From Macrostomum lignano (lineage: Eukaryota), in NCBI GenBank assembly GCA_002269645.1, contig NIVC01000020.1, positions 1,178,001 to 1,242,000 of the forward strand: DNA of 64,000 nucleotides, read 5' to 3'. Below are positions 4,158-40,200 of the stretch, piece after piece. The notes beneath the pieces were generated by a model. That model was not told the DNA's origin. It did no database searches and worked only from the letters and a program-made list of their open reading frames with translations. The translations under genes were made by a program, and so were the position numbers. How positions within the stretch are numbered: the stretch's first letter is position 1; each line of letters begins with the position of its first letter.

Positions 4158-5115
4158 TGCCGCTTCTGTCCCTACCAAGCATTCTTCTTTGTTTAACAGA
4201 CTTGGGTCTGCGGGCTGCAATCGAACAGCGCTGCAACTTCAGAATGCGTCAGGATGTGCGCTCAGTGTCCGCGGCGTCCCTGCCAGTGGCCCCCTCACTT
4301 CGAAGCCTTGGTGATGCACACACGGCACCCAGCTTCCCTCCATGCGCAACGAATCGGCGAATGCAACACCCCGAGTGCGCTGTTGGCCCATCCGTAGCTC
4401 TCCTGTGCAGGTAAATTCTTGACGCACCCGGTCTTTGCTTGCTGTTTTACAGATGGTGGGCAAAAATGACCTGGCTAGGCCGAGGAACAGCGCTGCGCAA
4501 CGGTCCCGGAAGGTACGCGGCCAGACTGAGGGGGAAAGAGAGCGCACGCTGCAGCAATAGAGGTGCGCCGCCATTTCGACCCGTTGGGGTTTCAAGTTTC
4601 TTATGCGAGCCCGGGAAAGGCAGGCCAGTGTACGATCGGCGGGTGTTTCATCTTCGCCCTTCAACCATCCTCTCTCCGATTTGAGGCGAGCGCCAATGGC
4701 ATCCAGCCGGTTCCATTAGATAGGCAGAAAACTGGCCTGGTCTCTCTGCATCTCAGTGTATCTTGGCAGGCGTACTGGCAGCGCAATAAATGCTCGCCCC
4801 TGAAGCCGCCTGCAGCAGATGAGGCTGCAGCAGCCAACCGGAGCAGCTTCCTCAGCAGCTGCAGCTTCTCCGCGGCGTCGCCTTCTCGGCTGCCTTCCCG
4901 AATCGCTCTGTGACCTGCTGGTTTGTTGCCGGCGAAGGCAACGTCTGGGAAGTTTGGAGACCTCTTCTTCTAGCAGCGAGGTCACGTTTCTCACCGCAAC
5001 CACCAGCTCGCCTCCCTTTAGCGCAACCGCCGAAAATCAGCTCGACTGGCGTCTCAGTTCGTGGAGCTCACCATGGCTGCCTAGGCTACCGGCGTCCTCC
5101 GAGACTTTCATACCC

Positions 5116-21600: not shown

Positions 21601-22611
21601 CTTATTCTGTAAAAAAACATCTAACGGTGCTTTTATGACATTAAAAGCTAAGGGATGATGGTGCTTCTTGGCGGGTGCTTCAGGTTATTTTGTTGCTTTT
21701 TGAGGCGCTCTTCAAGCCGCGAGAATTGCTGTTAGGACAAATCTTGTCTGAGGCGGTGATTTAACACTCGAAAGCTCTCTTGAGGAATGCGCTGTACTTG
21801 CAGGGTTGCTTGCTTGAATGCAAATCTCACAGTTCAATTGGGACAATTAGGACTGACAGTGACTACCGAATCAGTCTCTCCGATGATTGCGGCTTTCCCT
21901 TGGCAATCACAGCTAGACATGTTTGACCAATGACTAATCCGTTGGAGTTAAAATCGGATTAGCATTTATTAATCCAAGTGGTCGATTGTAGTTTTGAAAA
22001 TCTGTACGAGTGCTACAATCTAGCTGTCAGACTAAAGAGTCGGATTGAAGCTTTGAAGGCCATGTAAATAAAAATTGAGATGCGACGCATTTTTATTAAA
22101 GTTCAAAATGCAATTCAGACCGGACATTTTTTATTGAATTCCACAGAGCGCCGTCAGCAGAAGGAGGACCGCCGCCTGAAGGCCGAAGGCGGCCTGCCCG
22201 ACCTGCGCGACGCCGAGGCAGTGCAGCGCTTCTTCATGGAGGAGGTCCAGACTGGCGAGAGCCTGCTCGGCCGCGGCGACATCGAAGGCGGCGTTGAGCA
22301 CCTGGCCACCGCCATTGCCGTGTGCGCCCAGCCCAGCCACCTGCTGCAGATGCTGCAGCAAACCCTGCCCAACGAGATCTTTGAGCTCATCCTGGCCGCC
22401 CTGCCCAAGGCCAAGCAGAAGTTCAGCAAGGCTCGCGAGGCCCTCATCAGGGAGATGAGCGGAGGCACCTTCACCGTGCCCACGGAGGAGAAGGTGAGGG
22501 GCGTTGGGTCAGCTTGCAGCCTAGCAGTGCAGCTAACCGCTTGTAATACTCTGCTTTTAACCATTTTTTCAACAGAGAGTCGTCGAGATCCAGGAGGATG
22601 ACGTCGAATAG
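15611..22611 (+). CDS. TOMM20: Mitochondrial import receptor Tom20 (168 aa); exons 15611-15734, 22147-22493, 22576-22611
   Basis: GAAFLGYCVYFDQKRRSAPDFK anchor motif, LPDLRDAEAVQRFFMEEVQ.GE.LL..G.IE.GVEHLA.AIAVC.QP core and C-terminal EDDVE; junctions in phase (507 nt). Confidence 0.95.
16621..17597 (-). mobile_element. Internally deleted mariner element in TOMM20 intron 1
   Basis: TIRs (C/T)AAGGGGTGTCCAAAAA.TA.TGATACTTTT with TA TSD; minus-strand remnant SKMTVY*WMEQFSKERTDLAD...LLDEDFQMTIREITDRL resembling the mariner N-terminal HTH region. Confidence 0.75.
19072..19565. repeat. Degenerate ~32-bp tandem array (CAGTCACAGCAGTACCCAGTGCCCCAGCTACC) in TOMM20 intron 1
   Basis: About 15 diverged copies; source of overlapping low-complexity ORFs. 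Confidence 0.9.
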
Positions 22612-24300: not shown

Positions 24301-27300
24301 ATGGATTCCTTACACCGCTGTCACATGTGCGAGAAAACATGTGATACAGCTGCGCGTTTGACTGAGCATTTTAACGATGAGCACAACATTTCCCAATCGG
24401 TACCTGGCAAAGAAATGTCAGCGCGAATGGTGAGAAAGGTTCCTTCTAAAGCGAATTTACAAGATCGCGAAGGGGTTGGTCAAGCTTCAAGAACGAACGT
24501 CTCTGCTAATATTGAAGACGCGGATCAACCAAGTGCTGATTCTACTATCTGTCTCGAGTGCAACGCTTTTCTACGCGAGGAGCAAGATGCTGAACAGCAC
24601 TTCATGCGCTTTCATTCGGAGCTTTATGCTGCTTTTAAAGAAGGTTTTCTCGGCGACTCTATTGCTTTTACTTCTCTGACGAAAGAAAAAATTGCTGATT
24701 TTTATTCAAAAAGATGTTCCCGTCAATGCGTTCACGAGTCACCGTTTTCTACGCCTCTAGACGGAAGAGGGGGCGCCGCTGCAGATCTGCACCATCAACC
24801 GCCCATTGAGGACGCGTTTGACGATCGACTGCAAATAAAGCAGCAACTTGCTCGCGTAGATCGACTGTTTACTAGATTTAGGAGTAGGGGGAAAATATCC
24901 AAGTTGAAAACTCAGTTAGCAAACACTGCTCCCTTCTTTATTAACGAAGACGGAGTGTTTGAATTCAATTCCAACGAAGATCCGTTAGACATTAACTGTC
25001 CATTCTGCATTACACACAAGACAACGATTAAAGGTCTTGCAAAGCATTGTGTCAATCATCACGCACATGGTTTCGCGGATTGGAAGAGCGGCAAATACGG
25101 CCAGATCCAACTTCGCTTCGTACCCCCTGACTCTGACGTCGCCGTTTCAGTCCTTCAAGCTCTTGATGGGGCTATGCTACTTAAAGAAATTCCGCGCGGT
25201 GTTTCCTCGAGTTCGCTGTCAACCGAAAAGCAGTTAAGATGCTTTCCTCAAATTTTAGCTCAAAGGATTGATTGGAATATGTCAGTCAAAGCAGAAGCCG
25301 ACAAAACTCACGGGGTAATTCCCTCTTCGTCACTTCCGTGTCCTATTTGTGGTAAGCAAATCAGTGCCGAAGGAATAACAAACCACTGCTCAATTTACCA
25401 TCTAAAAGAGTACAATGACTGGAAAGAAGGAAAGTATGGTCGAGTCTCACTTTTCTCATTGAACTCTGTACTTTTCAAGAGTCCAAGCTCTGTACATCAA
25501 AGTTTTACTAAGCCAAAGTCCTTCATTCGTCGAGAATCGAAGAAACCCGTCTTTGTTTCTACAGCGGGTCGCAAGAAAGAGGCCACACGAGTACCGTGTC
25601 CTTTTTGTGGCGAGCGTATTTTTTCGAAGGGCATGGGAAAGCATTGCATCTACTTTCATAAAAAGCAGTACCGTGAGTGGAAAGCTGGGAAGTACGGCAG
25701 CGTTCCGTTACGTTTCATTCCCCTCCAGATTAGTTTCGAGTCTGCAGAAGCTGATCAGCATGATGAACCGTCAGAGGTCGGCAGAATTATTGACGCTCCA
25801 GCATCTGAGCTCACCTCATCATCAGTTTTAATGAATCGATCAATGGATGCTACCGGTACCGAATTGCAATTGGCTGAATCGCATCAGAAAAAATTTTCTT
25901 TCGATGGCTCTGTTTGTTACGCTGCAAGTCAAAAAGTTCTCTTTGACTCCGCTAAATCCGATTCCACTGAACTAAGAAAAAGTTTTTGTGTTTGTCATCT
26001 CTGCGATGGAGCCTTTGATACAACTGCCAAGCTGATAGAACACTTTGTAATTGATCATTTTGACTGTGATGAGCTACGTAAGTTGTTTATTATGCGAGTT
26101 GTATTCCACGAGCAACGATCCATGAACGGGTCTTTAGAGCCTTCAGGTGCTGGGTTTGGTATCTGTCACTATGTTTGCGATATGTGCCACACCCACTTCA
26201 TGACATGGCTCAGTCTCGGACAACATTATCGCTATCACATGCTTGAATTGTCCCAGAATGCATTCTCAACGTTTGACAATTGTGCTCCTGGCGGATATAC
26301 CCAGACTGATGTTAGTAAATTCAGTGCTTTCGCTCATCCTCGTCACAAATCTATAGAAAGCGACGCAGCAAAGAGCACATCGAGTAGTGATTCGAGCCAT
26401 CAGATTGCGCATACTGACACCCAAAACTTTTTGCTGGATGTCCCAAGAAGAACCAGCAATGCCGAAGGATCCTATAGCCTTCTGAATGGTAGTGCACTCG
26501 TCGGCGAGTCGCGGGCGAATCCCGTTCCAGCTTCATCCAAATGTAATTGGAAATGGAATAGGCCGGCAGTCGAATTAAATTTCAGCACTTCCACTGTTTT
26601 GAGCGGCTTGGAACAAGTATTGAATTCTATAAATAAAACAAGATCTATGCACAATTACCAGGCCTTAATTGATGCGACTGATTTGCGAAATTACGAGGCT
26701 CCACGCGATCTAAACTTCCCTGATCCCACAAAGGAGTGGTTTCCCTGTTGCTATTGTGCCATGCGATTTCAAGACGAGAGTGTCGCAAAAGCCCACATGT
26801 TGAGCTGTGGACATTTTTTCGCCTCTAAGCATCAAGAAACAACAAAAAGTTTCCTACAAGATAGAGATGATTTCGATAATTATGAACGATTTAAGGTGAG
26901 CTGAATGACATACTGTACTAAACGAGTTATTCCTATTTTGTGCAACATTTATCGTATTAAAAATATTCTATAATTTTAGGAATTGAATGAACGGCGAGAA
27001 GTCGTTTACAGGTGCAAGTTCTGCATGAGCACATTTAGCAACCGCCCTCTTATTGCCAACCATATGAAGTTCTGCAAGACTTCATCGCATGCAGTTTCTT
27101 ATAATAAGTGCTTTATGTGTGGTCAGCATTTCAATTTCAAGGAGTCTCTTCTCGCGCATATTTCGGAGTTCCATGCCACCCAAAGTCGGCACCAGTCGAG
27201 CCGCTACGCTCCTGTGTCGGACGCTTCAGCTGAACGGCAACAAAAGTTTCAATGTGGAATGTGTGGCAAAGAGTTTTCATCACAAGCCAACCTTCTGAAG

Positions 27301-27768
27301 CACAATGTAGTCCACACCAGTGCTCGAGTCAGTTGCCAAAACTGTGGTCGTGAGTTTAAGATGCCGTGTCACCTTGCTCGCCACTATTGTTTAGCAGACC
27401 CAGCTGAGACAAGATGCCATCCAACCTCCGCTGGTGACGAACAAGTTGCGGCAATGCTGCTTGACGACGATGAGCCACTGCACGAGTGTGACTTTTGTAA
27501 CGCCGTGTTCCGTAAGCCTGAGGACCTGCGCGTTCACAGTATTCGATGTCGTCAACGCGGCCGCGAGACCGTTGGCGACCGTGTCAATCTTGTGCACACC
27601 GGCTTGGGGCTTCAGGCTGTCGCAGCACTCAAGTTTTGCTGCGACCAGTGTCCCATGCAGTTTAATACTCGGAACAGTCTACTCTTACATCAACGTGCCC
27701 ACACGAAACTGCCATGTACGCATGGAACCGTCACTTCCTCGGTTGGTGATGGCGCTGGAAATCGCTAG
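24301..27768 (+). CDS. Multi-C2H2 zinc-finger protein (1127 aa); exons 24301-26895, 26980-27768
   Basis: Long ORFs with scattered Cx2Cx12Hx3-4H motifs, joined in phase by an 84-nt GT-AG intron (AAG|gtgagc ... ttttag|GAA). Confidence 0.85.
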
Positions 27769-28649
27769 TGCTGGTAGTGTGGAAACTTTTTATTTTTGGA
27801 AGCAAACGTTTGTCGGTTCAGCCTAATTGCTCTTATTGCGTATTGTTTTCGAGTCCTGCAACACCAAGTTTTCATAGATATTTTATGAATAACCTGTAAT
27901 TTCGTCGGATTCAGCTTGCTCTTGTCCCTGGATCTCGTTGCACTCACATGATTTGCTTTCTTTTCATGCTTAGCACGCTTGTGATTAGCATTTTTTCTAA
28001 TATAATTATTTTCACAATTTTCTGATGGCTCTGCAATCATTTTAAACTTAATTTATCTTCTATTCTATTGCTATTCGGATCGTGTTGGACTACTCTCTCC
28101 CATTGTGTATGAGGCACTTTGAATGGCAGGACATACTAGTAACTCACAAGTAAGACATAAAAAATATTTAAATTCTAAAAGTTGTATCGATTCGCAATTT
28201 AAAATACCCATTTTAATTCGTATGCTCACTGCCGTTCAGACAGAGTCTTGTCACAATGGACATATTTATTCACTATCTGTATTTATTCTGCGGTTATTTG
28301 CAGTCTGATATCTTAAAAGAGACGCAAAACTATTTGATTTAAGGCGGTCTTCAATTTTATTACGTGTCTGCTGCTTTCTCTGGAGTAAATGCGGATGTTT
28401 ATGTAGCTACTGACAGTAGAGATAATTTCACAGTGCGACTAAGCAGTAAAATGTTCAATTACTAGACTACCATGGTCTTGACTGGCTGAGCCAAGAAATG
28501 AGATTTGGTGTATAATTTCCACCATAACTCAAAGTTCCAATATGACTTAATAAGCTGACAATTTGATTCTTGTTTTATCTAGTTAGGAAAATAAAGCATG
28601 GGTTTGTTTAAACCAATTGATTTGCTATGATGTATCGAATTTGCAGTCA

Positions 28650-29906
28650 ATGCTGGCGCACTTCGCGCTGCTGATCCTGCTCCTGCAGCAGGCAGCTGCT
28701 GACAGCCTGTACGATCCGTACGGGCTTAACAAGGCCGAGACTGAGCAGCAACCGTTGGCTCAGCCTGAGTCAGAGTCGCGGGCAGCTCAGGCTGCAGCCT
28801 ACCGCACCTACTACCTCATTCTGGTGCGCCGGCTCCATCGGATTGTTTCTCGCCAGTTTGAGTCGCTGGATCCGCCAGACGATGCCAAAGTGCCGCTTGG
28901 CCTCGGCAGCGGCTGGATGCTCGATGGTGCCAGTCTGCGCGGTTTGAAGGCAGCTGCCGAACTTGACGAGCCCGGCGTTGAGCAACTGCAAGACGCGAAC
29001 GACCTGCTTCTGGCACTGTTTGGCAACCTGCAGCCTGCGAGTGAAGCCGGCAGCAGCCATCAATGGTGGCGCCTGTTTGACTCGGATTGGCTGGTGCTCG
29101 CAATTGTGGCATTCTGTGGGGTTGCGGCATTCTGCTGGATTGTGTTGCGCCGTGTTAGCGCCTGGCAGCTGTTTGCCGCAATGTTTATCTCCAGCTGGGT
29201 GGTGAACTATATCCGGTTGTACCGGCTGGAGCTGGCTCAGCGACAGCATGCGGTGACCAGTCTCCATTGTCGGCCCGCGGGACAAACTCTGAGCATCTTT
29301 GAGTCCATCAGCCTGTGGTTCACCGGCACAATGCGCGTCGCTCCGCCCAAAAACGACTGCCTGAAGCAGTTAGAAGCGCTGGCAGTTGATCCCTTTTGGG
29401 ATGTCAATCCGCTGGAGGCGGCAATCGACCTGCTAGGAAACATCGTATTGAACCGGCTGGTGCAGCTGATGCAGGCGGTAAATCTGGGCTACCGACACCT
29501 GATTGAGGGCCTGCCAATCTGGCACTCTGTCGGCATCACCTTCATCTTGCTCTTCTTGCCCACGCTTTTCTTGCTGCTGCGCTCTGGCTACGGCCTCCGC
29601 CTTATGTACGGCCTCCTTCACGTGGGTCCGGACGCGAACCGATTGCACGCGGAGCGCCTGGACACATTGGAGAGGGAGAATCGGCGCCTCCTCGAACTTG
29701 TCCACGCGGCGCCGCAGCCGACACCTGCTCGGGCGCTGCAGCGATCGGCGTCCATCGCCGTCAGCCAGCGGCAGCGTCCAGACGACCGGGGAGACGGCCC
29801 GGCAGCGGCGCCCGCAGTATTGGCAAGGACGCCGCCGCTGCGGATGCGCGCATCGCGGTCGGAGTGCAACATCTCGGTGGCCGCGTCGGTCGGTGACGAT
29901 CAATGA
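28650..29906 (+). CDS. CLCC1: Chloride channel CLIC-like 1 (CLCC1/MCLC) family ER membrane protein (418 aa), intronless
   Basis: Signal peptide, then TM segments with FISSWVVNYIRLYRLELAQRQ and C...EALAVDPFWDVNPLEA..., resembling CLCC1 (FLISF.WNW..LYK.A.A..Q; C..YYE..LVNP.W.V.P..A). Confidence 0.75.
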   Translation: MLAHFALLILLLQQAAADSLYDPYGLNKAETEQQPLAQPESESRAAQAAAYRTYYLILVRRLHRIVSRQFESLDPPDDAKVPLGLGSGWMLDGASLRGLKAAAELDEPGVEQLQDANDLLLALFGNLQPASEAGSSHQWWRLFDSDWLVLAIVAFCGVAAFCWIVLRRVSAWQLFAAMFISSWVVNYIRLYRLELAQRQHAVTSLHCRPAGQTLSIFESISLWFTGTMRVAPPKNDCLKQLEALAVDPFWDVNPLEAAIDLLGNIVLNRLVQLMQAVNLGYRHLIEGLPIWHSVGITFILLFLPTLFLLLRSGYGLRLMYGLLHVGPDANRLHAERLDTLERENRRLLELVHAAPQPTPARALQRSASIAVSQRQRPDDRGDGPAAAPAVLARTPPLRMRASRSECNISVAASVGDDQ

Positions 29907-30502
29907 CCAGAGTTTGCTCGCTGCCTTAGCGATTAGCTGTGGGATGTTCCCATGCACCCGCCGCTGCTTTTCTGAAGATAGTCGAAGTAGCTCACCTACG
30001 GATATTGGTTTTTGAAAAGCTGGAGTCTTAAAGATTCAGCTTAATTCCTCTATTTTCCTCTATTCCTCTAAAGCTTGAGCTCAGTTGTGGGCCAAGCAGT
30101 GATGCCCGATTGAGCCTTGAATTGGAGTTGTTTTTGAGTCTGTTCTGGTTCATCCTGGCCTCGTTTTCGCACGCTCTTTAAGCGCCACTCTCGTGAATCG
30201 CCCTCTGTGAAACCCGTGAATAATGATTACTCTATTTTCCTCTCGGCAGCAAACTTGCTTCGAAATTCTATATATTTTATTATTGAGCTAAATACAGTTC
30301 ACAGTTCGCTGCTGGCCTTATATTCCGAATTCGTATGTTTTTATATTCCTGGCTATAATGTCCAATCACTTTTTGCCTTTCTGCTTTGAAAATCAAGTTA
30401 GTGACTGCAGTGGAATTAGAGTTGCATTTTCTGGCTCTCACTCTAGCTGACAGGCCTTGCACTCAATGACTCTCGCAACCCGGCTTGTCCCGCTGCCGCC
30501 GC

Positions 30503-32537
30503 ATGGGCAAGCACAGAACTGACTCCCAGCAGCAGCAGGACGCTTCGCCTGACAGAGCCGCATCCAGTCGCAGCAGCAAGCGAAAGAAAGACAAGTCCAA
30601 AAAGAAGGAGAAGAAGTCCAAGAGCTCCAAGCGCGAGGGCCGGCGGGACCGCAGCCCCTCCGAGCGGAAGCGGCGCCACCGCCGTTCGTCCTCGAAGTCG
30701 GCATCCCCGGCGCCAGATTCGCTGAAGCGGCAGCAACGCAAGCGCGCCCGCAGCAGCAGCGACAGCCCCCTCGGCCAGCGTCACCGGGAAGGAAACTCGC
30801 GCGACCGGCCGCGGCCCGCCATGCCCAGCACCGGCCGCGGGGAGCGGGCCCGATCGCCCAGCCTCGCCTCCCAGATCCCCCTGCCAGCTGGGCCGCCGCC
30901 CGCCCAACAGCCGTCAACTGCTCAGGCGCCACCGCCGCCAACACCGCCACCGCCTCCCCCACCAGCGACATCGGCGTCCGTGACGGCAGCGGCGAGTCCC
31001 TTCGGTGCGCCTGCGCCTCAGCAATTTCAGCTGAATCCGTCGGCCGCTGACTTTGTTCCGCAGCTTGCCGCCTTCAACAGCCCGCCGCCTCAGCAGGCCT
31101 TCCTGTCGCCACCTCCCGCCCGCTTCTGCGCTCCGGCTCTGTCAACGCCGACCATTCTGTCGCCGCCGCTTGTCGCCATGAACTTTTCCGTGCCGCCGCC
31201 GCCGGTGTCCATCGCTGGCAAGGAAGGCGACGGCGGCAGCCGCGGCGGCAACAGCGCAGCGGTCGGGACCCTCGGCGACCGCAGCTCTGACGCGGAGCAG
31301 CCCGCTGACCTGCCAGACGAATTCTTGCAGCTCGGCGGCAACCTGCTGCTCAGCAAGCACTATCACGAGCCCGACTCCAGCATCTCCTATTTCCCCAACT
31401 TCCTGTCCAAGCCCGAGGCTGACAATCTGTTCCAGGTGCTGCTGAACGAGCTGGAGTGGCGCCAGAGAGACACCCTGGTGCGCGGCGAGTACCACAGGGA
31501 GCCCCGGCTCACCTGCTGGTTCGGCGTCCCCTACACCTACTCGGGTGTAGAGCTGCAGGCCAATCACGTGTGGCACCCCCTGCTCGCCGACCTCAAGGAC
31601 CGGCTGGTGCACAATCTGGATGCGAGCTTCAACTCTCTGCTGTGCAACCTGTACAGGTAACTGCTTCATCAGCATCCTGTAACTCAGCGGGATCAGCATC
31701 CCGTGACCCAGTGGGATGAGCATCCCGTGACCCAGTGGGATGAGCATCCCGTGACCCAGTGGGATCAGCAACCCGTGATCCAGTGGGATCAGCATCCCGT
31801 GACCCAGTGGGATCAGCAACCCGTGACCCAGTGGGATCAGCATCCCGTGACCCAGTGGGATCAGCATCCCGTGACCCAGTGGGATCAGGATCCCGTGATC
31901 CAGTGGGATCAGCATCCCGTGACCCAGTGGGATCAGCAACCCGTGACCCAGTGGGATCAGCATCCTGTGACCCAGTGGGATCAGCATCCTGTGACCCAGT
32001 GGGATCAGGATCCCGTGACCCAGTGGGATCAGGATCCCGTGACCCAGTGGGATCAGCATCCTGTGACCCAGTGGGATCAGGATCCCGTGACCCAGTGGGA
32101 TCAGGATCCCGTGATCCAGTGGGATCAGGATCCCGTGATCCAGTGGGATCAGGATCCCGTGATCAGCACTGGGTCAGCATCCCGTGACCCAGTGGGATCA
32201 GCATCCCGAGCCCGCTCCCCACAGGTCGGGCAGAGACTCGATCGGCTGGCACGCGGACGATGAGAAGTCGCTAGGCCGGTACCCCCTGATCGCCTCCATC
32301 TCCCTGGGCTACGAGCGCCAGTTCGAGGTGAAAACGAAGCGAATTCAGCCGAAATTCCGCGAGCTGAACGAATGGGGCCGCCACCTGCGGCTGCCGCTGC
32401 GGCACGGCTCGCTGCTGGTGATGCGGGGTGCCATGCAGGTGCACTGGCTGCACTCGGTGCCCAAGGACCAGCTGGCCTTCAACAGCCCCACCGCCTCTCG
32501 CATCAACCTCACCTTCCGCTACACGCACCCGGACTGA
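30503..32537 (+). CDS. ALKBH3: ALKBH3/ALKBH2-like 2OG-Fe(II) dioxygenase (488 aa) with a long K/RS-rich, Pro-rich, PAM2-containing N-terminus; exons 30503-31656, 32225-32537
   Basis: EPRLTCWFG, FNSLLCNLYR|SGRDSIGWHADDE (HxD), IASISLG..RQF, LRHGSLLVM.G..Q..WLHSVPK and RINLTFR; phase-2 intron joins correctly (1467 nt). Confidence 0.9.
31657..32208. repeat. 24-bp tandem array (GGGATCAGCATCCCGTGACCCAGT, ~22 copies) filling the ALKBH3 intron
   Basis: Direct repeats run from the donor to ~16 nt before the acceptor at 32224. Confidence 0.95.
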
Positions 32538-33189
32538 GTGACTCGCTCATGTGCAGAACAGTTAGTTCCCCTGTTGCTATCGCCTCCAGCTGTGTGCCTG
32601 CAAATGCCATGCCAGCCCCTTTCCGGCCCATAATGGCCGCTTATCAGATTACACTTCTCTGGAACTTGAGAGTCAAGGCATTTCTATATTTTAGCCCCTA
32701 ATTCTCCCTACTGGAAGTAGGCGGAACGCATATTGCAGTTAATTTTTATTTGGACTTAAATCTCGGGAAAACTTGTTTTACACATAAAATTGTTTTATCC
32801 GCAGCGTCTTATACACGACACAATCAAGGCATTTCTGATTTAGCGTGGGGAGATCTAGCTAGATTTTTGAGAACATTACCTATTATCACCTGTGCAGACT
32901 TGTCCAGCTTGTACATTTCATAATATTTATGTATACTGTACAAATGCATGTTCCTTTTTCTGATTAAATTAACTCATTGCTTTAGCCTGCACCCTCTTGG
33001 TGTCATTTTTGCTTGTCGCCTCTCTATATTCAGATATCATTCATTACATATTAACTAGTATTTGTGTCTGTGTACTCCTTGCACCTGCGCATTAGCCTTG
33101 GCTACCAGCTTCTCCCAGAGCCAATGCTCAATTTGTTGCTTCGTGATTAAAATTTCTGTGGACTTCTCGAGCCCGAGGTTTTGATTGGC

Positions 33190-34470
33190 GTGAGTCTGTC
33201 TGCCTGTGCTGTTGCACCTGACTGCTTGTGAGTCTGCCTGCCCGTGCTGTTGCACCTGACTGCTTGTGAGTCTGTCTGCCTGTGCTGTTGCACCTGACTG
33301 CTTGTGAGTCTGTCTGCCCGTGCTGTTGCACCTGACTGCTTGTGAGTCTGTCTGCCCGTGCTGTTGCACCTGACTGCTTGTGAGTCTGTCTGTGCTGTTG
33401 CACCTGACTGCTTGTGAGTCTGTCTGTGCTGTTGCACCTGACTGCTTGTGAGTCTGTCTGTGCTGTTGCACCTGACTGCTTGTGAGTCTGCCCGTGCTGT
33501 TGCACCTGACTGCTTGTGAGTCTGCCTGTGCTGTTGCACCTGACTGCTTGTGAGTCTGCCCGTGCTGTTGCACCTGACTGCTTGTGAGTCTGTCTGCCCG
33601 TGCTGTTGCACCTGACTGCTTGTGAGTCTGCCTGCCTGTGCTGTTGCACCTGACTGCTTGTGAGTCTGTCTGCCTGTGCTGTTGCACCTGACTGCTTGTG
33701 AGTCTGCCCGTGCTGTTGCACCTGACTGCTTGTGAGTCTGTCTGTGCTGTTGCACCTGACTGCTTGTGTCTGCCTGTGATGTTGCACCTGACTGCTTGTG
33801 TCTGCCTGTGCTGTTGCACCTGACTGCTTGTGTCTGCCCGTGCTGTTGCACCTGACTGCTTGTGTGTCTGCCCGTGCTGTTGCACCTGACTGCTTGTGAG
33901 TCTGTCTGTGCTGTTGCACCTGACTGCTTGTGTCTGCCTGTGATGTTGCACCTGACTGCTTGTGTCTGCCTGTGATGTTGCACCTGACTGCTTGTGTCTG
34001 CCTGTGCTGTTGCACCTGACTGCTTGAGTCTGCTCGTGCTGTTGCACCTAACTGCTTGTGTCTGCCCGTGCTGTTGCACCTGACTGCTTGTGAGTCTGTC
34101 TGCCCGTGCTGTTGCACCTGACTGCTTGTGAGTCTGTCTGTGCTGTTGCACCTGACTGCTTGTGAGTCTGCCCGTGCTGTTGCACCTGACTGCTTGTGTC
34201 TGCCCGTGCTGTTGCACCTGACTGCTTGTGAGTCTGCCTGTGCTGTTGCACCTGACTGCTTGTGAGTCTGTCTGTGCTGTTGCACCTGACTGCTTGTGAG
34301 TCTGTCTGTGCTGTTGCACCTGACTGCTTGTGAGTCTGTCTGTGCTGTTGCACCTGACTGCTTGTGAGTCTGCCCGTGCTGTTGCACCTGACTGCTTGTG
34401 AGTCTGCCTGTGCTGTTGCACCTGACTGCTTGTGAGTCTGCCTGTGCTGTTGCACCTGACTGCTTGTGAG
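33190..34470. repeat. Modular tandem array: constant core GTGCTGTTGCACCTGACTGCTTGT plus variable GAGTCT/GTCT/GCC[CT] linker (~30-38 bp, ~36 copies)
   Basis: Direct repeats visible; source of the long repetitive minus-strand ORFs 33055-34668. Confidence 0.95.
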
Positions 34471-36257
34471 AGGCACATTCTGAACTGCCTGTTGAACCCG
34501 AATGTCGGTGCAAAGCAGTTTTAATGGTGAGGGAAACAAACAGCCTTTAAATTTATCATAAATTTCAACTGCATTTAAATCTCTGCTGAAGGGCCTTTGA
34601 CGAAAATTCATGCAGCTCAAATTTGCACTGCATTTTGCGTACGCGCCTGACGTATCAGCAGTGGTCAATTATTCACCAATTTTTCATGTTTTTTTGATGA
34701 CGCAGTAAGGTAAATGGGTCTGCATGTCAATTGGTTATTAGCTCGAGTGACTGCCTGAGTGACTGCCTGTGTGAGCTCGAGATCGCCTCCCAGCTGCTTT
34801 ATAAACTGTTTCTCTGATTGCAGCGTCTGCAACTCCAATTTTCCCTTGTGCGTTCTGTCTCGAAATAAACTGGCTAAGCAGTCGCCTGCGGCCTGCCGCT
34901 ATTAGCAAAGCCCTGTATTTATGGTCCCGCTTCATTTTTATAATTGCTTCTTTGCTGTACATGTACATGCTAGCTTATGTGAGTCACAGGATTAACCAGT
35001 GAGTCTTTACAGAGCACATTTCCCAAATTGTGACGATCCGGTACTGACCAGTTGGGCTCGTTCCGTTATTACCGTTTATTCGTTAGTGAAGCAGCTTACT
35101 TTTTGATAACAATTTTGCTTACCAAAGTCATTTTATTTCTCCGTAACAGAATTGTTACAACTAGGGAAATGTTTTTAATAAGTTTTACTAAGAAGCATCA
35201 CGGACTGATTTCCGTGCGGTTCCGATTTGACGGCTGAAAGATGAATGACTCTCTTGCAGTGCTCTTTGTACGGTTTTAATTTTTATATTTTAGTTTATGT
35301 ATAAATCTGTTCTTTATTATGAGAGACGTAAGGCGTATCAGCGTATCAGCAGGAGGTTTTCAATCGAAAAAAGCTGAGAATTAGAGAAATTACCTCATAT
35401 TTGTTTGGATACAATCGATTAAAAGTTGCACACAAGTTTCGGCACAACAGACTTGACATAAAGCTTTTATTTTGAGAGTTTAGTAAGTCTAGGCAAGCAT
35501 TTTGTACTGTCTTACAGTACAGTTCCGGAGCTTCCGGTTAATCGTAGCTGTGCGTCACACGGGCAAGAATTTGAAAGCCCCACCAGCAGTAGCTAGTAGC
35601 CATTCTGCTGCCCGAAGGCCTGTTTGGTGTACAGGTAGCTGGGCCGCTGGTCCCCGGCTTGCAAGTCCTGGCGCAGCTGCTTCGGGCCCCACTTCATCCG
35701 CAGCCAGTTGCTCGGCGCGGTCACGTGCACCGTGAACTCGCGGGAGAATGGGCCCTGATTACGCTGCTGACCCTGTGGAGGAAAGTGCGAGTTTGGGGTT
35801 GTCGAACTTGAGCATGCTGTTGGCTTCTCAGTGATCCAAATGTTTTGCGTATTTTTTCCTTCCCTGCAAAAGCCGCAGTGACCTTAAACGTGTCGGCTCG
35901 TCAACGCCGCGCGATATTGTAGGAACTTGTAGCTATTTTGTAAATTTTACCTCTCAATAATAGCCGTCATTTAAGCTCGTTAAGCTCGTGTGTGTCTGTT
36001 AGGGTTATAAATCATACAGGTGTTTTATAATGCAAGCAAGAGTCAAGTGTACTTTAATAGCACGGCGGGTTCCTGAGGCCTGAGCATACTTCACCCTAAG
36101 CATGCTGTACCTAAGCTTTACGGTTGTGCGTTATAATTGAATTGGTTTGTTTGCATAGAATAGAGTCAACATTAGTTCATCATCTCGGTATGGAGCTGAT
36201 GAGAGATTTTAAAACGTAAAGGTGCTAAAATCAATTTTATGAAAAAAATGGGCAAAC

Positions 36258-36624
36258 CTTCTTCAAATCGAATCGCTGGACGGTCTCGAATGTTTTAGAA
36301 AAATATGGGTCATAGTCGTATAATTTTGATCTTTTTTGTACATGGCGACGTCTAGAGCTCGCCTGTCCCGGCCCAGACGGGAATTCTGGACAAGTCATGC
36401 TATTTTCTCCTTTGTAAAGATACCAAGCCATTCCCCCTTCTGGACCATCGAGATATTCGCCGATTTCTACCAGGTCTGATTTGGTGCATTCAATGCACCA
36501 TGTGCGCCAATCGGCACTGCGCCTTCGTGCAGCCTTGTCAAGCCGATCCAAATTTCATCAGCACGTCGACCACGTGTGTCTGCATCAGCTCTGACTTTGT
36601 TGTTTAAGGTGTTTAACCTGTTGA
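36258..36624 (-). other. Protein-like minus-strand segment(s), possibly downstream exon(s) of the uncharacterised gene or a pseudogene
   Basis: Two overlapping non-repetitive frames (LNTLNNKVRADADTRGRRADEIWIGLTRLHEGAVP... and ...DLVEIGEYLDGPEGGMAWYLYKG...KLYDYDPYFSKTF), the second ending at an AAG|gt donor. No homolog recognised. Confidence 0.35.
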
Positions 36625-37295
36625 ATGTTCAGTAGCTCCGCCTGGGTGAAGGCCAGTGACCAATGAAGTTAGAGCTGATGCAGAAATTTGGTCGTCTTAA
36701 GCTAATAATGTTGAGCCCGAGTAACCTACATGTATGTACACAAATGATGCGTCATTCTGCTCACAGTGACACCGGGTTTGGCAAAAAGCAACAAAATTTG
36801 GACTTGGGAATGGGGAGAACAAGCAAGGGCATAATTAGGGACTCCACTTTATGAGTAAAGTTGACGGGCCCTTCGGAGATTTTTGCCTGTAGAAAAACTC
36901 GGACCTGGCAGAATATTTAGATATCTTGACGTTACCGAAGGCTGGCGACTTAATTCTTATTTTAGAAGATGCACAACAAACAGTTAGCCAGTGTTCCCGA
37001 ATTTCGTGTGCCTGCGTTGCTCCGTTCCGGCGCAGCAAAAAAATTGTCACGGCGGGGGGGAATCCCCCCAAAATTGGCAGTTCTACTGTTAAAGCACACT
37101 GAGCTTTGTTGTGTTAAGCTGTTAGTCTTTTTTAGAAAATTTGAATCAATTTGCAACTTACATTTGCACGATATAGCTGTTGTTGGTTTAAATAATTGGC
37201 TGTTATTTCCTTAGAATATTGGTATAGCTAATAGAGAGGCAGGATATATACCTTCTAAGATATTTAGCTTTCCGCCCTAGTAGTCCTTGACTCAC

Positions 37296-40200
37296 CTTCC
37301 TGTCCACCTGCCAGTGCCTCTGCGTGCTCATCGTCCACCGCAGTCTCTCAGCTTCGTCGCCGCGCGAAACCAGCGTCGCTTCTCGTCGAAGCCGCGGCTG
37401 CTGATGCACGGATGTCGACAACGCAGTCGGCGGGAGTCCGCGGCGCAGGAAAATCTCCGCCCGGCTCTGCACGTAGGGAGCGGCCAGCTGCCGCTGCGCG
37501 CCTGCCGCCATAGCTGGCTCTGTGCGGCTGCGCTGAAGTTGCAGTCCCGGGCTGGAATTTCAGCGCGAAACCCTGAGAGCTGGCACTCACTGCCTCACGA
37601 TCCCTACCCTGAGAGCTGGCACCCACTGCCTCCCTACCCTGAGAGCTGGCACTCACTGCCTCACGATCCCTACCCTGAGAGCTGGCACCCACTGCCTCCC
37701 TACCCTGAGAGCTGGCACTCACTGCCTCACGATCCCTACCCTGAGAGCTGGCACCCACTGCCTCCCTACCCTGAGAGCTGGCACCCACTGCCTCGCGATC
37801 CCTACCCTGAGAGCTGGCACCCACTGCCTCGCGATCCCTACCCTGAGAGCTGGCACCCACTGCCTCGCGATCCCTACCCTGAGAGCTGGCACCCACCGCC
37901 TCCCAACCCTGAGAGCTGGCACCCACTGCCTCCCAACCCTGAGAGCTGGCACCCACTGCCTCCCAACCCTGAGAGCTGGCACCCACTGCCTCCCAACCCT
38001 GAAAGCTGGCACATACTGTCTCCCAACCCTGAAAGCTGGCACCCACTGCCTCGCGATCCCTACCCTGAAAGCTGGCACCCACTGTCTCCCAACCCTGAGA
38101 GCTGGCACCCACTGCCTCCCAGCCCTGAGAGCTGGCACCCACTGCCTCCCTACCCTGAAAGCTGGCACCCACTGTCTCCCAACCCTGAGAGCTGGCACCC
38201 ACTGCCTCCCTACCCTGAAAGCTGGCACCCACTGTCTCCCAACCCTGAGAGCTGGCACCCACTGCCTCTCAACCCTGAGAGCTGGCACCCACTGTCTCCC
38301 AACCCTGAAAGCTGGCACCCACTGCCTCGCGATCCCTACCCTGAAAGCTGGCACCCACTGTCTCCCAACCCTGAGAGCTGGCACCCACTGCCTCCCAGCC
38401 CTGAGAGCTGGCACCCACTGTCTCCCAACCCTGAGAGCTGGCACCCACTGCCTCCCTACCCTGAAAGCTGGCACCCACTGTCTCCCAACCCTGAGAGCTG
38501 GCACCCACTGCCTCTCAACCCTGAGAGCTGGCACCCACCGCCTCCCAACCCTGAAAGCTGGCACCCACTGCCTCGCGATCCCTACCCTGAAAGCTGGCAC
38601 CCACTGTCTCCCAACCCTGAGAGCTGGCACCCACTGCCTCCCAGCCCTGAGAGCTGGCACCCACTGTCTCCCAACCCTGAGAGCTGGCACCCACTGCCTC
38701 CCAACCCTGAAAGCTGGCACCCACTGCCTCGCGATCCCTACCCTGAAAGCTGGCACCCAATGTCTCCCAACCCTGAGAGCTGGCACCCACTGCCTCCCAG
38801 CCCTGAGAGCTGGCACCCACTGTCTCCCAACCCTGAGAGCTGGCACCCACTGCCTCCCAACCCTGAGAGCTGGCACCCACTGCCTCCCAGCCCTGAGAGC
38901 TCACGCTGATATTGGTCATGACTTGATTTCGTTGGCACCCAGACCTGCGGCTCTCACCTGGGAATGTCGCTGCCGCCGCGGCTTGCTGGCAGGGAGGCCG
39001 CCGCGCCAGCCGGTTGCTCCGCAGGTCGAAGCGGCGGGCCAACATAGAGCCTGAGGGACTTGCTGGGCAGCGGGTATTTCCACTGGCTTGCCGCGTCTCT
39101 CCTGGCGGTCGGGTGCATGCGGTGAATTGCCTCAGGATTTTCTCAATCATTTAATGGGAAAAGGGTGCATGCGGTGAATTGCCTCAGGATTTTCTCAATC
39201 ATTTAATGGGAAAAGGGTGCATGCGGTGAATTGCCTCAGGATTTTCTCAATCATTTAATGGGAAAAGGGTGCATGCGGTGAATTGCCTCAGGATTTTCTC
39301 AATCATTTAATGGGAAAAGGGTGCATGCGGTGAATTGCCTCAGGATTTTCTCAATCATTTAATGGGAAAAGGGTGCATGCGGTGAATTGCCTCAGGATTT
39401 TCTCAATCATTTAATGGGAAAAGGGTGCATGCGGTGAATTGCCTCAGGATTTTCTCAATCATTTAATGGGAAAAGGGTGCATGCGGTGAATTGCCTCAGG
39501 ATTTTCTCAATCATTTAATGGGAAAAGGGTGCATGCGGTGAATTGCCTCAGGATTTTCTCAATCATTTAATGGGAAAAGGGTGCATGCGGTGAATTGCCT
39601 CAGGATTTTCTCAATCATTTAATGGGAAAAAGGTATTCGCAGGGGATTTCGGGCGCTGCCACGAATCAATTGGCGACTGACGGCAAACCCGCAGTCAGCC
39701 AGAAGGCAAAAGTCATGTTTACTCAGCTGACCCCGAGCAGACAGACGCACACGGTTGTGTACTCAGGCACCCTCTCAGCTGCCCCCGACTCGATCTCATC
39801 GTTAGGCATGCACATGGAGTACCAGCTGCTTCGTCGAGAATTGCAGAAGCCGCCCCAGTCTAATTTTTTAATCGCCCTGATGTCATTGAAGCGAGCCTGG
39901 CGCGAGAGTCGGTTGCGCTGACCGCTGTGTCCCCCTCCCAGTAGAATTATTAATATAACTTTACATGTACTTGAAAGGCCAGGGGACATTCACTCTGGCA
40001 CTTGGTTTCATTTCATCAGCTCGATTCCGAACAACTCACGGCGAGCGCGGCGGCGAGTAGCCGTGCCTGTCGTAGATGGCGGATGCCGCTGCTGCCAGGT
40101 CCGGACTGCCCGCCAGGTGCGGCGGCGGCTGCTGCTGGCCGCTGCCGATGCTGGGCAGGCGGAAGGTCACCGAGGGCGATGCCGGCTGGTGCGGCCGTTG

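What the first reader, a model, noticed from the sequence alone, without database searches (positions are those of the whole stretch)
30503..31400. AlkB demethylase fused to a PAM2 poly(A)-binding-protein motif and an RS/K-rich domain
Seen: about 270 aa precede the ALKBH3-like domain. They comprise a K/R/S-rich splicing-factor-like tract (KKKEKKSK...RDRSPSERKRRHRRSSSKSASP), a polyproline tract and QFQLNPSAADFVPQ (~31022-31063). Established: this matches the PAM2 consensus (LNxxAxEFxP) that binds the MLLE domain of PABP, and ALKBH3 removes m1A/m3C from ssDNA and RNA. Inference: an RNA demethylase tethered to polyadenylated mRNPs or speckles, an architecture I do not know for canonical ALKBH2/3. 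A CLK kinase, which phosphorylates RS domains, lies in the same window, but no link is shown.
Basis: partly seen in the sequence, partly recalled or inferred. Interest (0 to 1): 0.75.

Follow-up and report, generated by a model that had tools for sequence, protein, structure and literature searches.

The report
Flatworm ALKBH3 carrying a PABP-docking motif
A flatworm (Macrostomum lignano) ALKBH3-type nucleic-acid demethylase has a long disordered N-terminal tail with a textbook PAM2 motif, the peptide that docks onto poly(A)-binding protein, and the same pairing has arisen separately in spiders and sea stars, which suggests a real and so far undescribed link between this repair enzyme and polyadenylated mRNA.

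Summary
The window is Macrostomum lignano contig NIVC01000020.1. The gene has two exons (30503-31656, 32225-32537) and encodes 488 aa, already deposited as A0A1I8I2Q1 / PAA93870.1. Residues 292-488 are an intact ALKBH3-type Fe(II)/2OG dioxygenase. Residues 1-285 are predicted disordered and hold a K/R/S-rich basic tract, a polyproline run and FQLNPSAADFVP (aa 175-186, 31025-31060).

That peptide meets every recognition position of the PAM2 consensus. It is the only such match in all six frames of the window. Its only Pfam hit is PAM2, at 18.6 bits, just under the 20-bit cut-off.

New here: at least 14 spider ALKBH3 orthologues carry a canonical PAM2 in a C-terminal tail, and two sea stars carry one in the N-terminal tail. 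Close relatives in each lineage lack it. Shuffles predict 0.013 strict matches in the whole protein set.

I found no paper linking AlkB proteins to PAM2.

The PABP-tethering idea is therefore plausible but untested, because no binding data exist. The "RS domain/speckle" and CLK-kinase ideas are not supported. Translation of the N-terminal extension rests on a transcript-based annotation and a codon-bias signal, not on data I could inspect.

The parts
30503..31656 (+). Exon 1 of the ALKBH3-like gene (aa 1-384 plus two bases of codon 385). It starts at the first ATG after the in-frame stop at 30467-30469.
   Evidence: The CDS is identical to the deposited models, apart from one extra N-terminal residue in PAA93870.1.
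30503..30877 (+). Basic K/R/S-rich disordered tract (aa 1-125). It includes KRKKDKSKKKEKKSKSSKR and KRQQRKRAR, which look like nuclear localisation signals. It is not a true RS domain.
   Evidence: 41 K+R, 27 S and only 7 RS/SR dipeptides. pLDDT is below 50. In-frame codon-usage score is +0.20 against -0.18 and -0.27 in the other frames; GC3 is 0.85.
30929..30964 (+). Polyproline run PPPPTPPPPPPP (aa 143-154). The homeologous copies L001 and L002 carry an in-frame 6-bp (two-proline) insertion here.
31025..31060 (+). PAM2 motif FQLNPSAADFVP (aa 175-186): L177 at position 3, N178 at 4, P179 at 5, A181 at 7, F184 at 10, P186 at 12.
   Evidence: The only pattern match in six frames of the window; 0.006% of shuffles give the strict form. 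Pfam PAM2 is the sole hit, E=0.0014, 18.6 bits against a 20-bit cut-off. Consensus taken from PMC7356810 and PMC2854688. The region is predicted disordered. The DNA is identical in L001 and L002.
31178..31180 (+). Internal ATG (M226). It is the start of the 263-aa model annotated on the frameshifted copy, and a possible start of a short isoform of canonical length.
   Evidence: P0010 / PAA75878.1 starts here. The frameshift in L001 corresponds to window position 30839.
31382..31656 (+). AlkB (2OG-FeII_Oxy_2) domain, the part in exon 1 (aa 294-384).
   Evidence: Pfam 4.9e-34. PDB ALKBH3 3.7e-50. pLDDT above 90.
31657..32224 (+). The single intron (GT...AG), almost filled by a 24-bp tandem repeat (31668-32208, 22.5 copies).
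   Evidence: Intron length inferred from the locus and product sizes is about 1.6 kb in L002 and 2.4 kb in L001.
32225..32537 (+). Exon 2 (aa 385-488 plus the stop). It holds the Fe(II) ligands H394 (32250-32252), D396 and H461, and the 2OG-binding R477/R483.
   Evidence: Aligned to human ALKBH3. These columns are invariant or nearly invariant across 148 homologues.

Best explanation
The gene encodes a catalytically competent ALKBH3-type Fe(II)/2-oxoglutarate dioxygenase. This family oxidatively removes 1-methyladenine and 3-methylcytosine from single-stranded DNA and RNA.

The usual short N-terminal tail has grown into a disordered region of about 285 residues. That region carries basic, NLS-like nucleic-acid-friendly clusters, a polyproline run and one canonical PAM2 short linear motif.

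The proposed mechanism is as follows. The PAM2 peptide docks into the two hydrophobic pockets of an MLLE domain through L177 and F184, with N178, P179, A181 and P186 as supporting contacts. The most likely partner is the MLLE domain of cytoplasmic poly(A)-binding protein. Docking would concentrate the demethylase on polyadenylated mRNPs, where it could repair or erase base methylation on mRNA.

What is shown: the gene structure, the intact catalytic residues, the ALKBH3 affinity, the motif match, the predicted disorder, and the independent recurrence of PAM2 in ALKBH3 of spiders and sea stars.

What is inferred: translation from M1, MLLE binding, PABPC as the partner, and mRNA as the substrate.
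For: 1. Enzyme. Pfam 2OG-FeII_Oxy_2, 4.9e-34. Human ALKBH3 structures score 3.7e-50 against 9e-25 for ALKBH2. Foldseek ranks human ALKBH3 first, with target-normalised TM-scores of 0.84-0.89. H394, D396, H461, R477 and R483 are conserved.

2. Motif. All six PAM2 recognition positions are met, as those positions are defined in PMC7356810 and PMC2854688. PAM2 is the only one of 24,736 Pfam families that the peptide hits, at E=0.0014. It is the only match in six frames of 64 kb, and the strict form appears in 6e-5 of shuffles.

3. Context. Residues 1-285 are predicted disordered and residues 290-488 are folded with pLDDT above 90. This is the usual setting for a short linear motif.

4. Recurrence.
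- The first four spider examples came from an unbiased search with the flatworm protein.
- Among 388 fetched AlkB-family proteins, 24 carry the strict pattern, against 0.013 expected from shuffles. They fall into three lineages.
- Spiders: 18 sequences from at least 14 species, with PAM2 in the C-terminal tail. L, N, A, A, F and P form an invariant island in an otherwise poorly conserved tail.
- Two spider examples are uninterrupted ORFs on 2.3-2.5 kb RNA-run contigs, so the domain and the motif are on one mRNA.
- Sea stars: Acanthaster has PGLNPNAPVFEP and Patiria has GLNPYAPEFKS at the homologous N-terminal position.
- Each PAM2 lineage has close relatives without the motif: Asterias, the scorpion Centruroides and the second M. 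lignano paralogue. This points to at least three separate gains.

5. N-terminus in the mRNA. The GenBank annotation was built from RNA-seq transcript assemblies with TransDecoder ORF calls (PMC5730564). It gives 489-aa and 490-aa products on two copies, with only the one intron. Residues 1-125 show in-frame codon bias and GC3 of 0.85, like the catalytic exon. The indel in the proline run is in frame.
Against: - There are no binding, localisation or activity data.
- The Pfam score (18.6 bits) is below the 20-bit gathering cut-off.
- The motif could be checked only in three near-identical M. lignano copies, because no closer flatworm orthologue was found.
- The P/A-rich segment that holds the motif (aa 126-225) shows no codon-usage signal of its own.
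- Low divergence between homeologues also holds for the 3' flank (4 differences in 653 nt), so it does not prove coding.
- One copy (L001) has a 1-bp deletion in the extension and is annotated from M226, giving a protein of canonical length.
- The strongly basic, NLS-like tract predicts a nuclear protein, whereas PABPC is mainly cytoplasmic.
- By my own rough estimate from the shuffle rate, a few strict PAM2 matches per proteome are expected by chance.
- I could not check that M. lignano has an MLLE-bearing PABP.
Confidence: 0.5

Rival explanations
1. The extension is translated, but the PAM2-like peptide is a chance match in a P/A/S-rich disordered region. The tail then serves only as a basic NLS or non-specific nucleic-acid-binding appendage, and the enzyme behaves like ordinary nuclear ALKBH3.
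For: The Pfam score is below the gathering cut-off. No flatworm orthologue was available to test conservation. The relaxed ELM pattern gives chance hits at about the expected rate in the protein set, 4 observed against 2.6 expected. The tail is dominated by NLS-like basic clusters.
Against: The strict pattern is expected 0.013 times in the 388-protein set, yet it occurs in three separate ALKBH3 lineages and is invariant across spiders. All six recognition positions are met.
Confidence: 0.2
2. The real protein starts at M226 and has canonical ALKBH3 length (263 aa). The upstream 675 nt would then be a 5' UTR that happens to be open in frame in GC-rich DNA, or it is translated only in a minor isoform.
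For: The 263-aa model PAA75878.1 exists on copy L001, which has a frameshift in the extension. The reverse strand of the same GC-rich stretch also has open frames of 154-177 aa, so openness alone is weak evidence. The segment aa 126-225 has no codon-bias signal. Low divergence also applies to the 3' flank. TransDecoder simply takes the longest ORF.
Against: Two other copies keep the frame open, and their 6-bp indel is in frame. Residues 1-125 show in-frame codon bias and GC3 of 0.85. The 1-bp deletion lies in a G run, a typical long-read assembly error. A perfect PAM2 in exactly this frame, the only one in six frames of 64 kb, would be an odd coincidence for a UTR.
Confidence: 0.12
3. The PAM2 is functional, but its partner is the MLLE domain of the HECT ubiquitin ligase UBR5/HYD rather than PABPC. 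The motif would then control turnover of the enzyme or its recruitment in the nuclear DNA-damage response.
For: MLLE domains occur in PABPs and in UBR5 (PMC2854688). The NLS-like basic tract predicts nuclear residence. ALKBH3 is a DNA/RNA alkylation-repair enzyme.
Against: Nothing here discriminates between the two MLLE domains. Most characterised PAM2 proteins act through PABPC. The sea-star versions combine PAM2 with RG/RGG-rich, RNA-binding-type tails, which points to RNA.
Confidence: 0.12
4. The K/R/S-rich tract is a true RS domain. It would be phosphorylated by the CLK kinase in the window and would target the enzyme to nuclear speckles.
For: A few RS/SR and SP sites are present. A CLK2-like kinase ORF lies at 4819-6936.
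Against: There are only 7 RS/SR dipeptides in 125 aa, the tract is mostly lysine-rich, and there is no RRM. The kinase is 24 kb away with TOM20-like, zinc-finger and MCLC-like genes in between. Gene proximity carries no functional meaning in an animal genome.
Confidence: 0.05

Closest known systems
Human ALKBH3 (PDB 2IUW, 8JNK, 8JNR, 9NCZ)
   Same: Same fold and catalytic apparatus. Identity over the domain is 42-43%, with target-normalised TM-scores of 0.84-0.89. The HxD...H iron triad and the RxNxTxR 2OG site are present, and it scores much closer to ALKBH3 than to ALKBH2.
   Different: Human ALKBH3 is 286 aa and has a short N-terminus of about 70 residues, beginning with the RRRARVQGAW motif (from my own knowledge). 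That motif is also seen in the annelid, mollusc, sea-star and second M. lignano homologues. The flatworm protein has about 290 aa before the domain, only a possible remnant of that motif (KRQQRKRAR), and a PAM2. None of the vertebrate ALKBH3 proteins fetched has a PAM2.
PAM2-motif partners of the PABP MLLE domain (Paip1/2, ataxin-2, eRF3, Tob, PAN3, LARP4/4B and others)
   Same: A 12-residue motif with L3, N4, P5, A7, F10 and P12 in a disordered region. This matches LNxxAxEFxP and the refined definition --Phi-(P/V)-A--F-P.
   Different: None of the known PAM2 proteins named in the two structural papers read is a nucleic-acid demethylase, and no paper found links PAM2 with any AlkB protein. Position 9 is D rather than the commoner E. 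Binding has not been tested.
Unannotated ALKBH3 homologues with PAM2 in spiders (for example Argiope XP_055953982.1, Nephila GFS91089.1, Parasteatoda XP_042907467.1, Stegodyphus KFM66967.1) and sea stars (Acanthaster planci P0306, Patiria XP_038049091.1)
   Same: An ALKBH3-type domain plus a long disordered extension with a canonical PAM2. In sea stars the motif is N-terminal, between the basic RxQGGW motif and the domain, the same relative place as in the flatworm.
   Different: In spiders the motif lies 250-300 aa C-terminal to the domain and is followed by a conserved segment of about 80 aa. The extensions share no detectable sequence similarity with the flatworm tail. The lineages are not sisters in a rough NJ tree, so they look like independent gains.
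Arabidopsis YTHDF (ECT2)-PABP interaction (PMC10702811)
   Same: In concept, a protein of the mRNA-methylation machinery uses its disordered region to contact PABP (abstract seen).
   Different: ECT2 is an m6A reader, not an eraser or repair enzyme, and it is from plants. I did not read the paper beyond its abstract.
Human ALKBH2 with its N-terminal PCNA-binding APIM motif (from my own knowledge, not checked here)
   Same: An AlkB homologue steered to its substrate context by a short linear motif in the N-terminal tail.
   Different: The motif, the partner (PCNA) and the context (replication forks, dsDNA) all differ. The flatworm protein is ALKBH3-like, not ALKBH2-like.

Membership tests
AlkB family, ALKBH3 subfamily (Fe(II)/2OG dioxygenases) | 2OG-FeII_Oxy_2 (PF13532) domain above the curated cut-off | tested here: met
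   118.7 bits against a cut-off of 31.2, covering aa 294-483 and profile positions 2-194 of 194.
AlkB family, ALKBH3 subfamily (Fe(II)/2OG dioxygenases) | HxD...H iron-binding triad and RxNxTxR 2-oxoglutarate site | tested here: met
   H394, D396, H461, R477, N479, T481 and R483 align to human ALKBH3. These columns are invariant or at least 90% conserved in 148 homologues.
AlkB family, ALKBH3 subfamily (Fe(II)/2OG dioxygenases) | Closer to ALKBH3 than to ALKBH2 or other AlkB homologues | tested here: met
   PDB phmmer gives 3.7e-50 for ALKBH3 and 9e-25 for ALKBH2. Foldseek ranks ALKBH3 chains 1-10. The best database hits outside M. lignano are named ALKBH3.
AlkB family, ALKBH3 subfamily (Fe(II)/2OG dioxygenases) | Canonical N-terminal RRRxRVQGxW motif of animal ALKBH3 | tested here: inconclusive
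   The motif is present in Owenia, Patella, the sea stars and the second M. lignano paralogue. Here there is only KRQQRKRARSSS (aa 75-86), which may be a remnant.
AlkB family, ALKBH3 subfamily (Fe(II)/2OG dioxygenases) | Oxidative demethylation of m1A/m3C in single-stranded DNA or RNA | not testable with these tools
   This needs an enzyme assay.
PAM2-motif proteins (MLLE-domain ligands) | 12-residue motif with hydrophobic position 3, N/S at 4, P/V at 5, A at 7, F at 10 and P at 12 | tested here: met
   FQLNPSAADFVP has L177, N178, P179, A181, F184 and P186. The definition comes from PMC7356810 and PMC2854688.
PAM2-motif proteins (MLLE-domain ligands) | Pfam PAM2 (PF07145) above the gathering score | tested here: not met
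   18.6 bits against a cut-off of 20, E=0.0014, the only family hit. This is a database threshold for an 18-position profile, not a biological criterion. Two spider peptides pass it (21.0 and 21.9 bits).
PAM2-motif proteins (MLLE-domain ligands) | Motif lies in an intrinsically disordered, accessible region | tested here: met
   AlphaFold2 pLDDT is 36-48 over aa 171-190, with no secondary structure before aa 276.
PAM2-motif proteins (MLLE-domain ligands) | Motif conserved among orthologues while the flanks drift | tested here: inconclusive
   The motif is identical in three M. lignano copies, but these are 99% identical overall. No other flatworm orthologue was available. The criterion is met within spiders and between two sea stars.
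PAM2-motif proteins (MLLE-domain ligands) | Direct, F10-dependent binding to an MLLE domain, and presence of an MLLE protein in the organism | not testable with these tools
   No multimer prediction or binding assay was available.
SR / RS-domain proteins | Long stretch dominated by RS/SR dipeptides, usually together with an RRM | tested here: not met
   7 RS/SR dipeptides in aa 1-125, a tract that is mainly K-rich. There is no RRM or any other Pfam hit in aa 1-279.

The most novel reading that the evidence does not exclude
Coupling of ALKBH3 to poly(A)-binding protein is a selected and repeatedly invented solution in animals. It appears to have arisen at least three times (flatworm, valvatid sea stars, spiders). 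In these lineages ALKBH3 would work as an mRNA-directed repair or demethylation enzyme, delivered to poly(A) mRNPs through MLLE-PAM2 docking. That would be natural evidence that base-methylation damage or m1A/m3C marks on mRNA matter enough for selection to have tethered an eraser to mRNA.
Probability: 0.4. Interest if true: 0.8.

Novelty: new variant of a known kind. Interest (0 to 1): 0.62.

Why it matters
Whether ALKBH3 acts on mRNA in a meaningful way, either as an m1A/m3C eraser or as an RNA-repair enzyme, is debated. How it would find mRNA is unknown (from my own knowledge of the field).

A natural physical tether to poly(A)-binding protein would give a concrete recruitment mechanism. 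Apparent independent invention in three animal phyla would argue that the mechanism is under selection.

It also offers easy experimental entry points: peptide-MLLE binding, F-to-A mutants, and transgenesis and RNAi, both available in M. lignano.

It would add a new functional class, a nucleic-acid demethylase, to the list of PAM2 clients of PABP.

Tried and rejected
1. Whole-protein word-index search. Low-complexity words swamped it and only 9 hits came back. I repeated it without the basic and polyproline tract.

2. Search for homologues of the N-terminal extension. An exhaustive phmmer run against 1.84 billion representatives showed no listed hit aligning before aa 257. The extension therefore has no detectable relatives. 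Only the best 150 of 7,166 hits are listed, so weak matches to the tail alone could have been missed.

3. Exact-sequence look-up of the 488-aa protein in assemblies. Nothing was on record. The locus was reached through the cluster members P0128 and P0129 instead.

4. Homeologue divergence as a test of coding. The extension is about 10 times less diverged than the upstream intergenic DNA (3/675 against 29/596, Fisher p=2e-7). The 3' flank is just as conserved (4/653). I therefore rejected this as evidence for translation.

5. Codon-usage test. It is clear for aa 1-125 but uninformative for the P/A-rich aa 126-225.

6. Idea that the conserved (E/K)F.F..P element just before the ALKBH3 domain is a degenerate PAM2. 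I rejected it, because sea stars have both elements as separate motifs.

7. Expression or trans-splicing information for Mlig016133 and Mlig032459 in papers and supplements. None was found. Only a different ALKBH3-like gene, Mlig024840.g4, appears.

8. Literature on PAM2 together with ALKBH3, AlkB or demethylases. The hits were reviews or unrelated papers, mostly listing each term only a few times; I did not open them.

9. M. lignano PABP.
Full report
**Where the window comes from.** Window 24500-38537 is 100% identical to Macrostomum lignano assembly GCA_002269645.1, contig NIVC01000020.1 (L003). The organism is a free-living flatworm, so bacterial-style ORF lists must be read with introns in mind.

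**The gene.**
- The ATG at 30503 is the first ATG after an in-frame TGA at 30467-30469.
- No AG dinucleotide lies between them, so no splice acceptor can extend the reading frame upstream.
- The frame stays open to a GT donor at 31657.
- The intron (31657-32224) is almost entirely a 24-bp tandem repeat.
- It ends in ...CCCCACAG, and exon 2 runs from 32225 to the stop at 32535-32537.
- The spliced product is 488 aa and reads NLYR|SGRDSIGWHADDE across the junction.
- It is identical to UniRef A0A1I8I2Q1. Apart from one extra N-terminal residue, it is identical to PAA93870.1, BOX15_Mlig016133g1.
- The gene is therefore already deposited, under the uninformative names "hypothetical protein" and "Fe2OG dioxygenase domain-containing protein".

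**The catalytic part.**
- Pfam places 2OG-FeII_Oxy_2 at aa 294-483 with E=4.9e-34.
- Against solved structures, human ALKBH3 scores 3.7e-50 and ALKBH2 scores 9e-25.
- An AlphaFold2 model has pLDDT above 90 over aa 290-488.
- Foldseek ranks human ALKBH3 chains first, with target-normalised TM-scores of 0.84-0.89 and 42-43% identity.
- The iron ligands H394, D396 and H461 and the 2-oxoglutarate arginines R477 and R483 are in place.
- The closest database relatives outside M. lignano are ALKBH3 proteins of vertebrates and an annelid, at 45-51% identity.
- M. lignano also has a second, old ALKBH3 paralogue, P0135 / BOX15_Mlig033276, 41% identical over the domain. It has the canonical N-terminus RRRQARVQGAW and no PAM2.
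- A third ALKBH3-like gene, Mlig024840.g4, is listed in a published supplementary table.

**The N-terminal extension.**
- About 290 residues precede the domain, against roughly 70-100 in canonical ALKBH3.
- AlphaFold2 predicts no secondary structure before aa 276. pLDDT is mostly below 50, with a small rise over the polyproline run.
- Residues 1-125 have 41 K+R, 27 S and 13 D+E, with NLS-like clusters KRKKDKSKKKEKKSKSSKR and KRQQRKRAR.
- Only 7 RS/SR dipeptides occur in that stretch, and no RRM or other domain was found. It is a basic disordered tract, not an RS domain in the splicing-factor sense.
- P143-P154 is the polyproline run.
- Residues 175-186, FQLNPSAADFVP (31025-31060), are the motif of interest.

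**Is the motif more than chance?**
- The canonical consensus is LNxxAxEFxP. F10 is the main determinant of binding, L3 fills the second hydrophobic pocket, N4 stabilises the beta-turn, and A7 must be small (PMC7356810).
- The flatworm peptide has L3, N4, P5, A7, F10 and P12. Only E9 is replaced, conservatively, by D.
- An ELM-style pattern matches exactly once in all six frames of the 64-kb window, at this site.
- The pattern occurs in 0.5% of composition-preserving shuffles of the N-terminal 290 aa. The strict form occurs in 0.006%.
- Scanned as a 36-37-aa peptide, PAM2 (PF07145) is the only Pfam family it hits: E=0.0014, 18.6 bits, just below the 20-bit gathering score.
- From the shuffle rate I estimate a few strict chance matches per proteome. 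The motif alone is therefore suggestive, not conclusive.

**The unexpected support: recurrence in other ALKBH3 proteins.**

An exhaustive phmmer search of 1.84 billion representative proteins found no listed hit aligning to the extension; every best stretch starts at aa 257 or later. I then scanned the retrieved ALKBH3-like proteins for the PAM2 pattern. Four spider proteins of about 600 aa came up, each with a canonical PAM2 some 250-300 aa C-terminal to the AlkB domain:

| Species | Motif |
|---|---|
| Nephila | SLLNANAPDFIPH |
| Argiope | YVLNADAPDFVPQ |
| Parasteatoda | YELNADAIEFIPK |
| Stegodyphus | SDLNANAPDFIPS |

- In their alignment, L, N, A, A, F and P are an invariant island in an otherwise poorly conserved tail. 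That is the classic signature of a functional short linear motif.
- A profile search with these four found more long spider orthologues: Araneus, three Trichonephila species, Larinioides, Oedothorax, Stegodyphus dumicola and three proteins from sequencing-run assemblies. Every one has the motif.
- One short 320-aa hit from a run assembly (P0302) lacks the motif. It has no species name and may be partial.
- Two of the run-derived proteins are uninterrupted 634-aa and 739-aa ORFs on 2.3-2.5 kb contigs. These are most simply transcripts, so the domain and the motif sit on one mRNA.
- The scorpion Centruroides homologue (400 aa) lacks the motif.
- In sea stars, Acanthaster planci has PGLNPNAPVFEP and Patiria miniata has GLNPYAPEFKS. 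Both lie at the homologous place in the N-terminal tail, between the RIQGGW basic motif and the domain, and both are flanked by RG-rich sequence.
- Asterias, sea cucumbers, molluscs, the annelid Owenia and all vertebrates fetched lack the motif.
- In the 388 AlkB-family proteins fetched (130,016 residues), the strict pattern occurs in 24 proteins from these three lineages, against 0.013 expected from shuffles. Matches to the relaxed pattern only occur at the chance rate, 4 observed against 2.6 expected.
- The later spider sequences were retrieved with a profile that contained the motif, but the first four came from an unbiased search.
- A rough neighbour-joining tree without bootstrap puts the three lineages apart, each next to relatives that lack the motif. 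At least three independent gains is the simplest reading.
- All ten tested peptides hit PAM2 as their only Pfam family, at 14-22 bits.

**Is the extension really part of the protein?**

Evidence for:
- The GenBank annotation of this assembly was derived from RNA-seq-based transcript assemblies (StringTie, TACO and TBONE), with ORFs called by TransDecoder (PMC5730564).
- That annotation gives a 489-aa product on this locus, marked 5'-partial and starting one codon before the ATG. It gives a complete 490-aa product on a second copy, L002. The gene spans allow only the single intron.
- Residues 1-125 have an in-frame codon-usage signal (+0.20 against -0.18 and -0.27) and GC3 of 0.85, like the catalytic exon.
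- The homeologous copies differ by an in-frame 6-bp insertion in the proline run.

Evidence against or neutral:
- The third copy, L001, has a 1-bp deletion in a run of four G (equivalent to window 30839) and is annotated from M226 as a 263-aa protein of canonical length. It may be an assembly error, a decaying copy, or a hint of a short isoform.
- The P/A-rich segment aa 126-225 has no codon signal of its own.
- The reverse strand of this GC-rich stretch also has open frames of 154-177 aa.
- The low divergence of the extension between homeologues (3/675 against 29/596 upstream, p=2e-7) is shared by the 3' flank (4/653). It therefore shows membership of the conserved transcribed unit, not translation.
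- I could not inspect reads.

**Mechanism proposed.** The enzyme part should remove 1-methyladenine and 3-methylcytosine from single-stranded nucleic acid, which is established for ALKBH3 and inferred here. The disordered tail would supply three things:
- Basic clusters for nuclear import and/or non-specific nucleic-acid contact.
- A PAM2 peptide that docks on an MLLE domain.
- As a consequence, recruitment to poly(A) mRNPs, if the partner is PABPC as for most known PAM2 proteins.

MLLE also occurs in the ubiquitin ligase UBR5. A nuclear, NLS-rich repair enzyme could equally use that partner, and this remains a live rival. The RG-rich tails of the sea-star versions lean towards an RNA context.

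The CLK kinase is real: the ORF at 4819-6936 matches CLK2 at 3.8e-153. It is 24 kb away, with TOM20-like, C2H2 zinc-finger and MCLC-like genes in between. The tract it was supposed to phosphorylate is not an RS domain. No link is supported.

**Novelty.** Full-text searches for PAM2 with ALKBH3, AlkB or demethylase, and for ALKBH3 with PABPC1, returned reviews or unrelated papers, mostly listing each term only a few times; I did not open them. Nothing was found on this gene in M. lignano. The protein is a member of a known family and the motif is a known motif. The combination, and above all its recurrence in three phyla, appears undescribed. I rate it a new variant of a known kind, of moderate-to-high interest and directly testable.

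Noticed in passing
window 31668-32208 (intron of the ALKBH3-like gene); L001 and L002: A 24-bp tandem repeat (ATCAGCATCCCGTGACCCAGTGGG, 22.5 copies) fills the only intron. Intron length inferred from the locus and product sizes is 568 bp here, about 1.6 kb in L002 and about 2.4 kb in L001, so the array varies strongly in copy number between homeologous copies. It also creates long spurious ORFs on both strands.
   Followed up: partly
window 33198-34470: A 34-bp tandem repeat (37 copies, 91% matches) lies about 660 bp downstream of the stop codon. It produces 330-461-aa artefactual ORFs on the minus strand. Its length also differs between the three copies.
   Followed up: partly
L001, position equivalent to window 30839: One homeologous copy has a 1-bp deletion in a GGGG run inside the N-terminal extension. 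This is why GenBank annotates it as a 263-aa protein starting at M226 (PAA75878.1). It could be an assembly error or a real frameshift.
   Followed up: partly
window 30466-30522: A short upstream ORF (ATG at 30466, 18 codons) overlaps the main ATG out of frame. It would matter only if the mRNA 5' end lies upstream of it. The 5'-partial annotation suggests the assembled transcript starts at about 30498-30500.
   Followed up: no
window 4819-6936 (+): A 705-aa ORF with a CLK2-like LAMMER kinase domain (aa 337-678; PDB CLK2 E=3.8e-153) and a long N-terminal region.
   Followed up: yes
window 22080-22601, 24301-27768, 28617-29906, 60457-61548 (all +): Neighbouring genes: a TOM20/MAS20-like import receptor, a C2H2 zinc-finger protein (annotated as a 1127-aa product), a weak MCLC/CLCC1-like membrane-protein ORF just upstream of the ALKBH3 gene, and a seven-blade WD40 protein.
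   Followed up: partly
window 54996-56528 (-): An ORF with reverse-transcriptase and RNase H domains, that is, a fragment of a retroelement.
   Followed up: no
P0135 / P0284 (BOX15_Mlig033276g5); Mlig024840.g4 in a supplement of PMC5816591: M. lignano has further ALKBH3-like genes. One has the canonical RRRQARVQGAW N-terminus and an uncharacterised C-terminal extension of about 220 aa. Another is trans-spliced, and a supplementary table lists Schmidtea homologues for it.
   Followed up: partly
P0214, P0178, P0220, P0242 (alignment A2, columns ~545-640): Downstream of the spider PAM2 there is a conserved segment of about 80 aa (...RD..E......R....I...) with no Pfam match. It may be a small folded domain that came along with the motif.
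   Followed up: no
P0153, P0323 (Asterias) and P0306, P0168 (Acanthaster, Patiria): Sea-star ALKBH3 homologues have RG/RGG-rich N-terminal tails. In Asterias these are expanded into GRGGGHEQQTH repeats, and there is a long C-terminal EASSMEEE(N/S)KAP repeat array. RG/RGG tails are typical of RNA-binding proteins.
   Followed up: no
P0388 (Logan-derived, 562 aa): An AlkB domain is fused to a La domain and CCCH zinc fingers, according to precomputed Pfam hits. This is another eukaryotic AlkB protein joined to RNA-binding modules. The organism is unknown.
   Followed up: no
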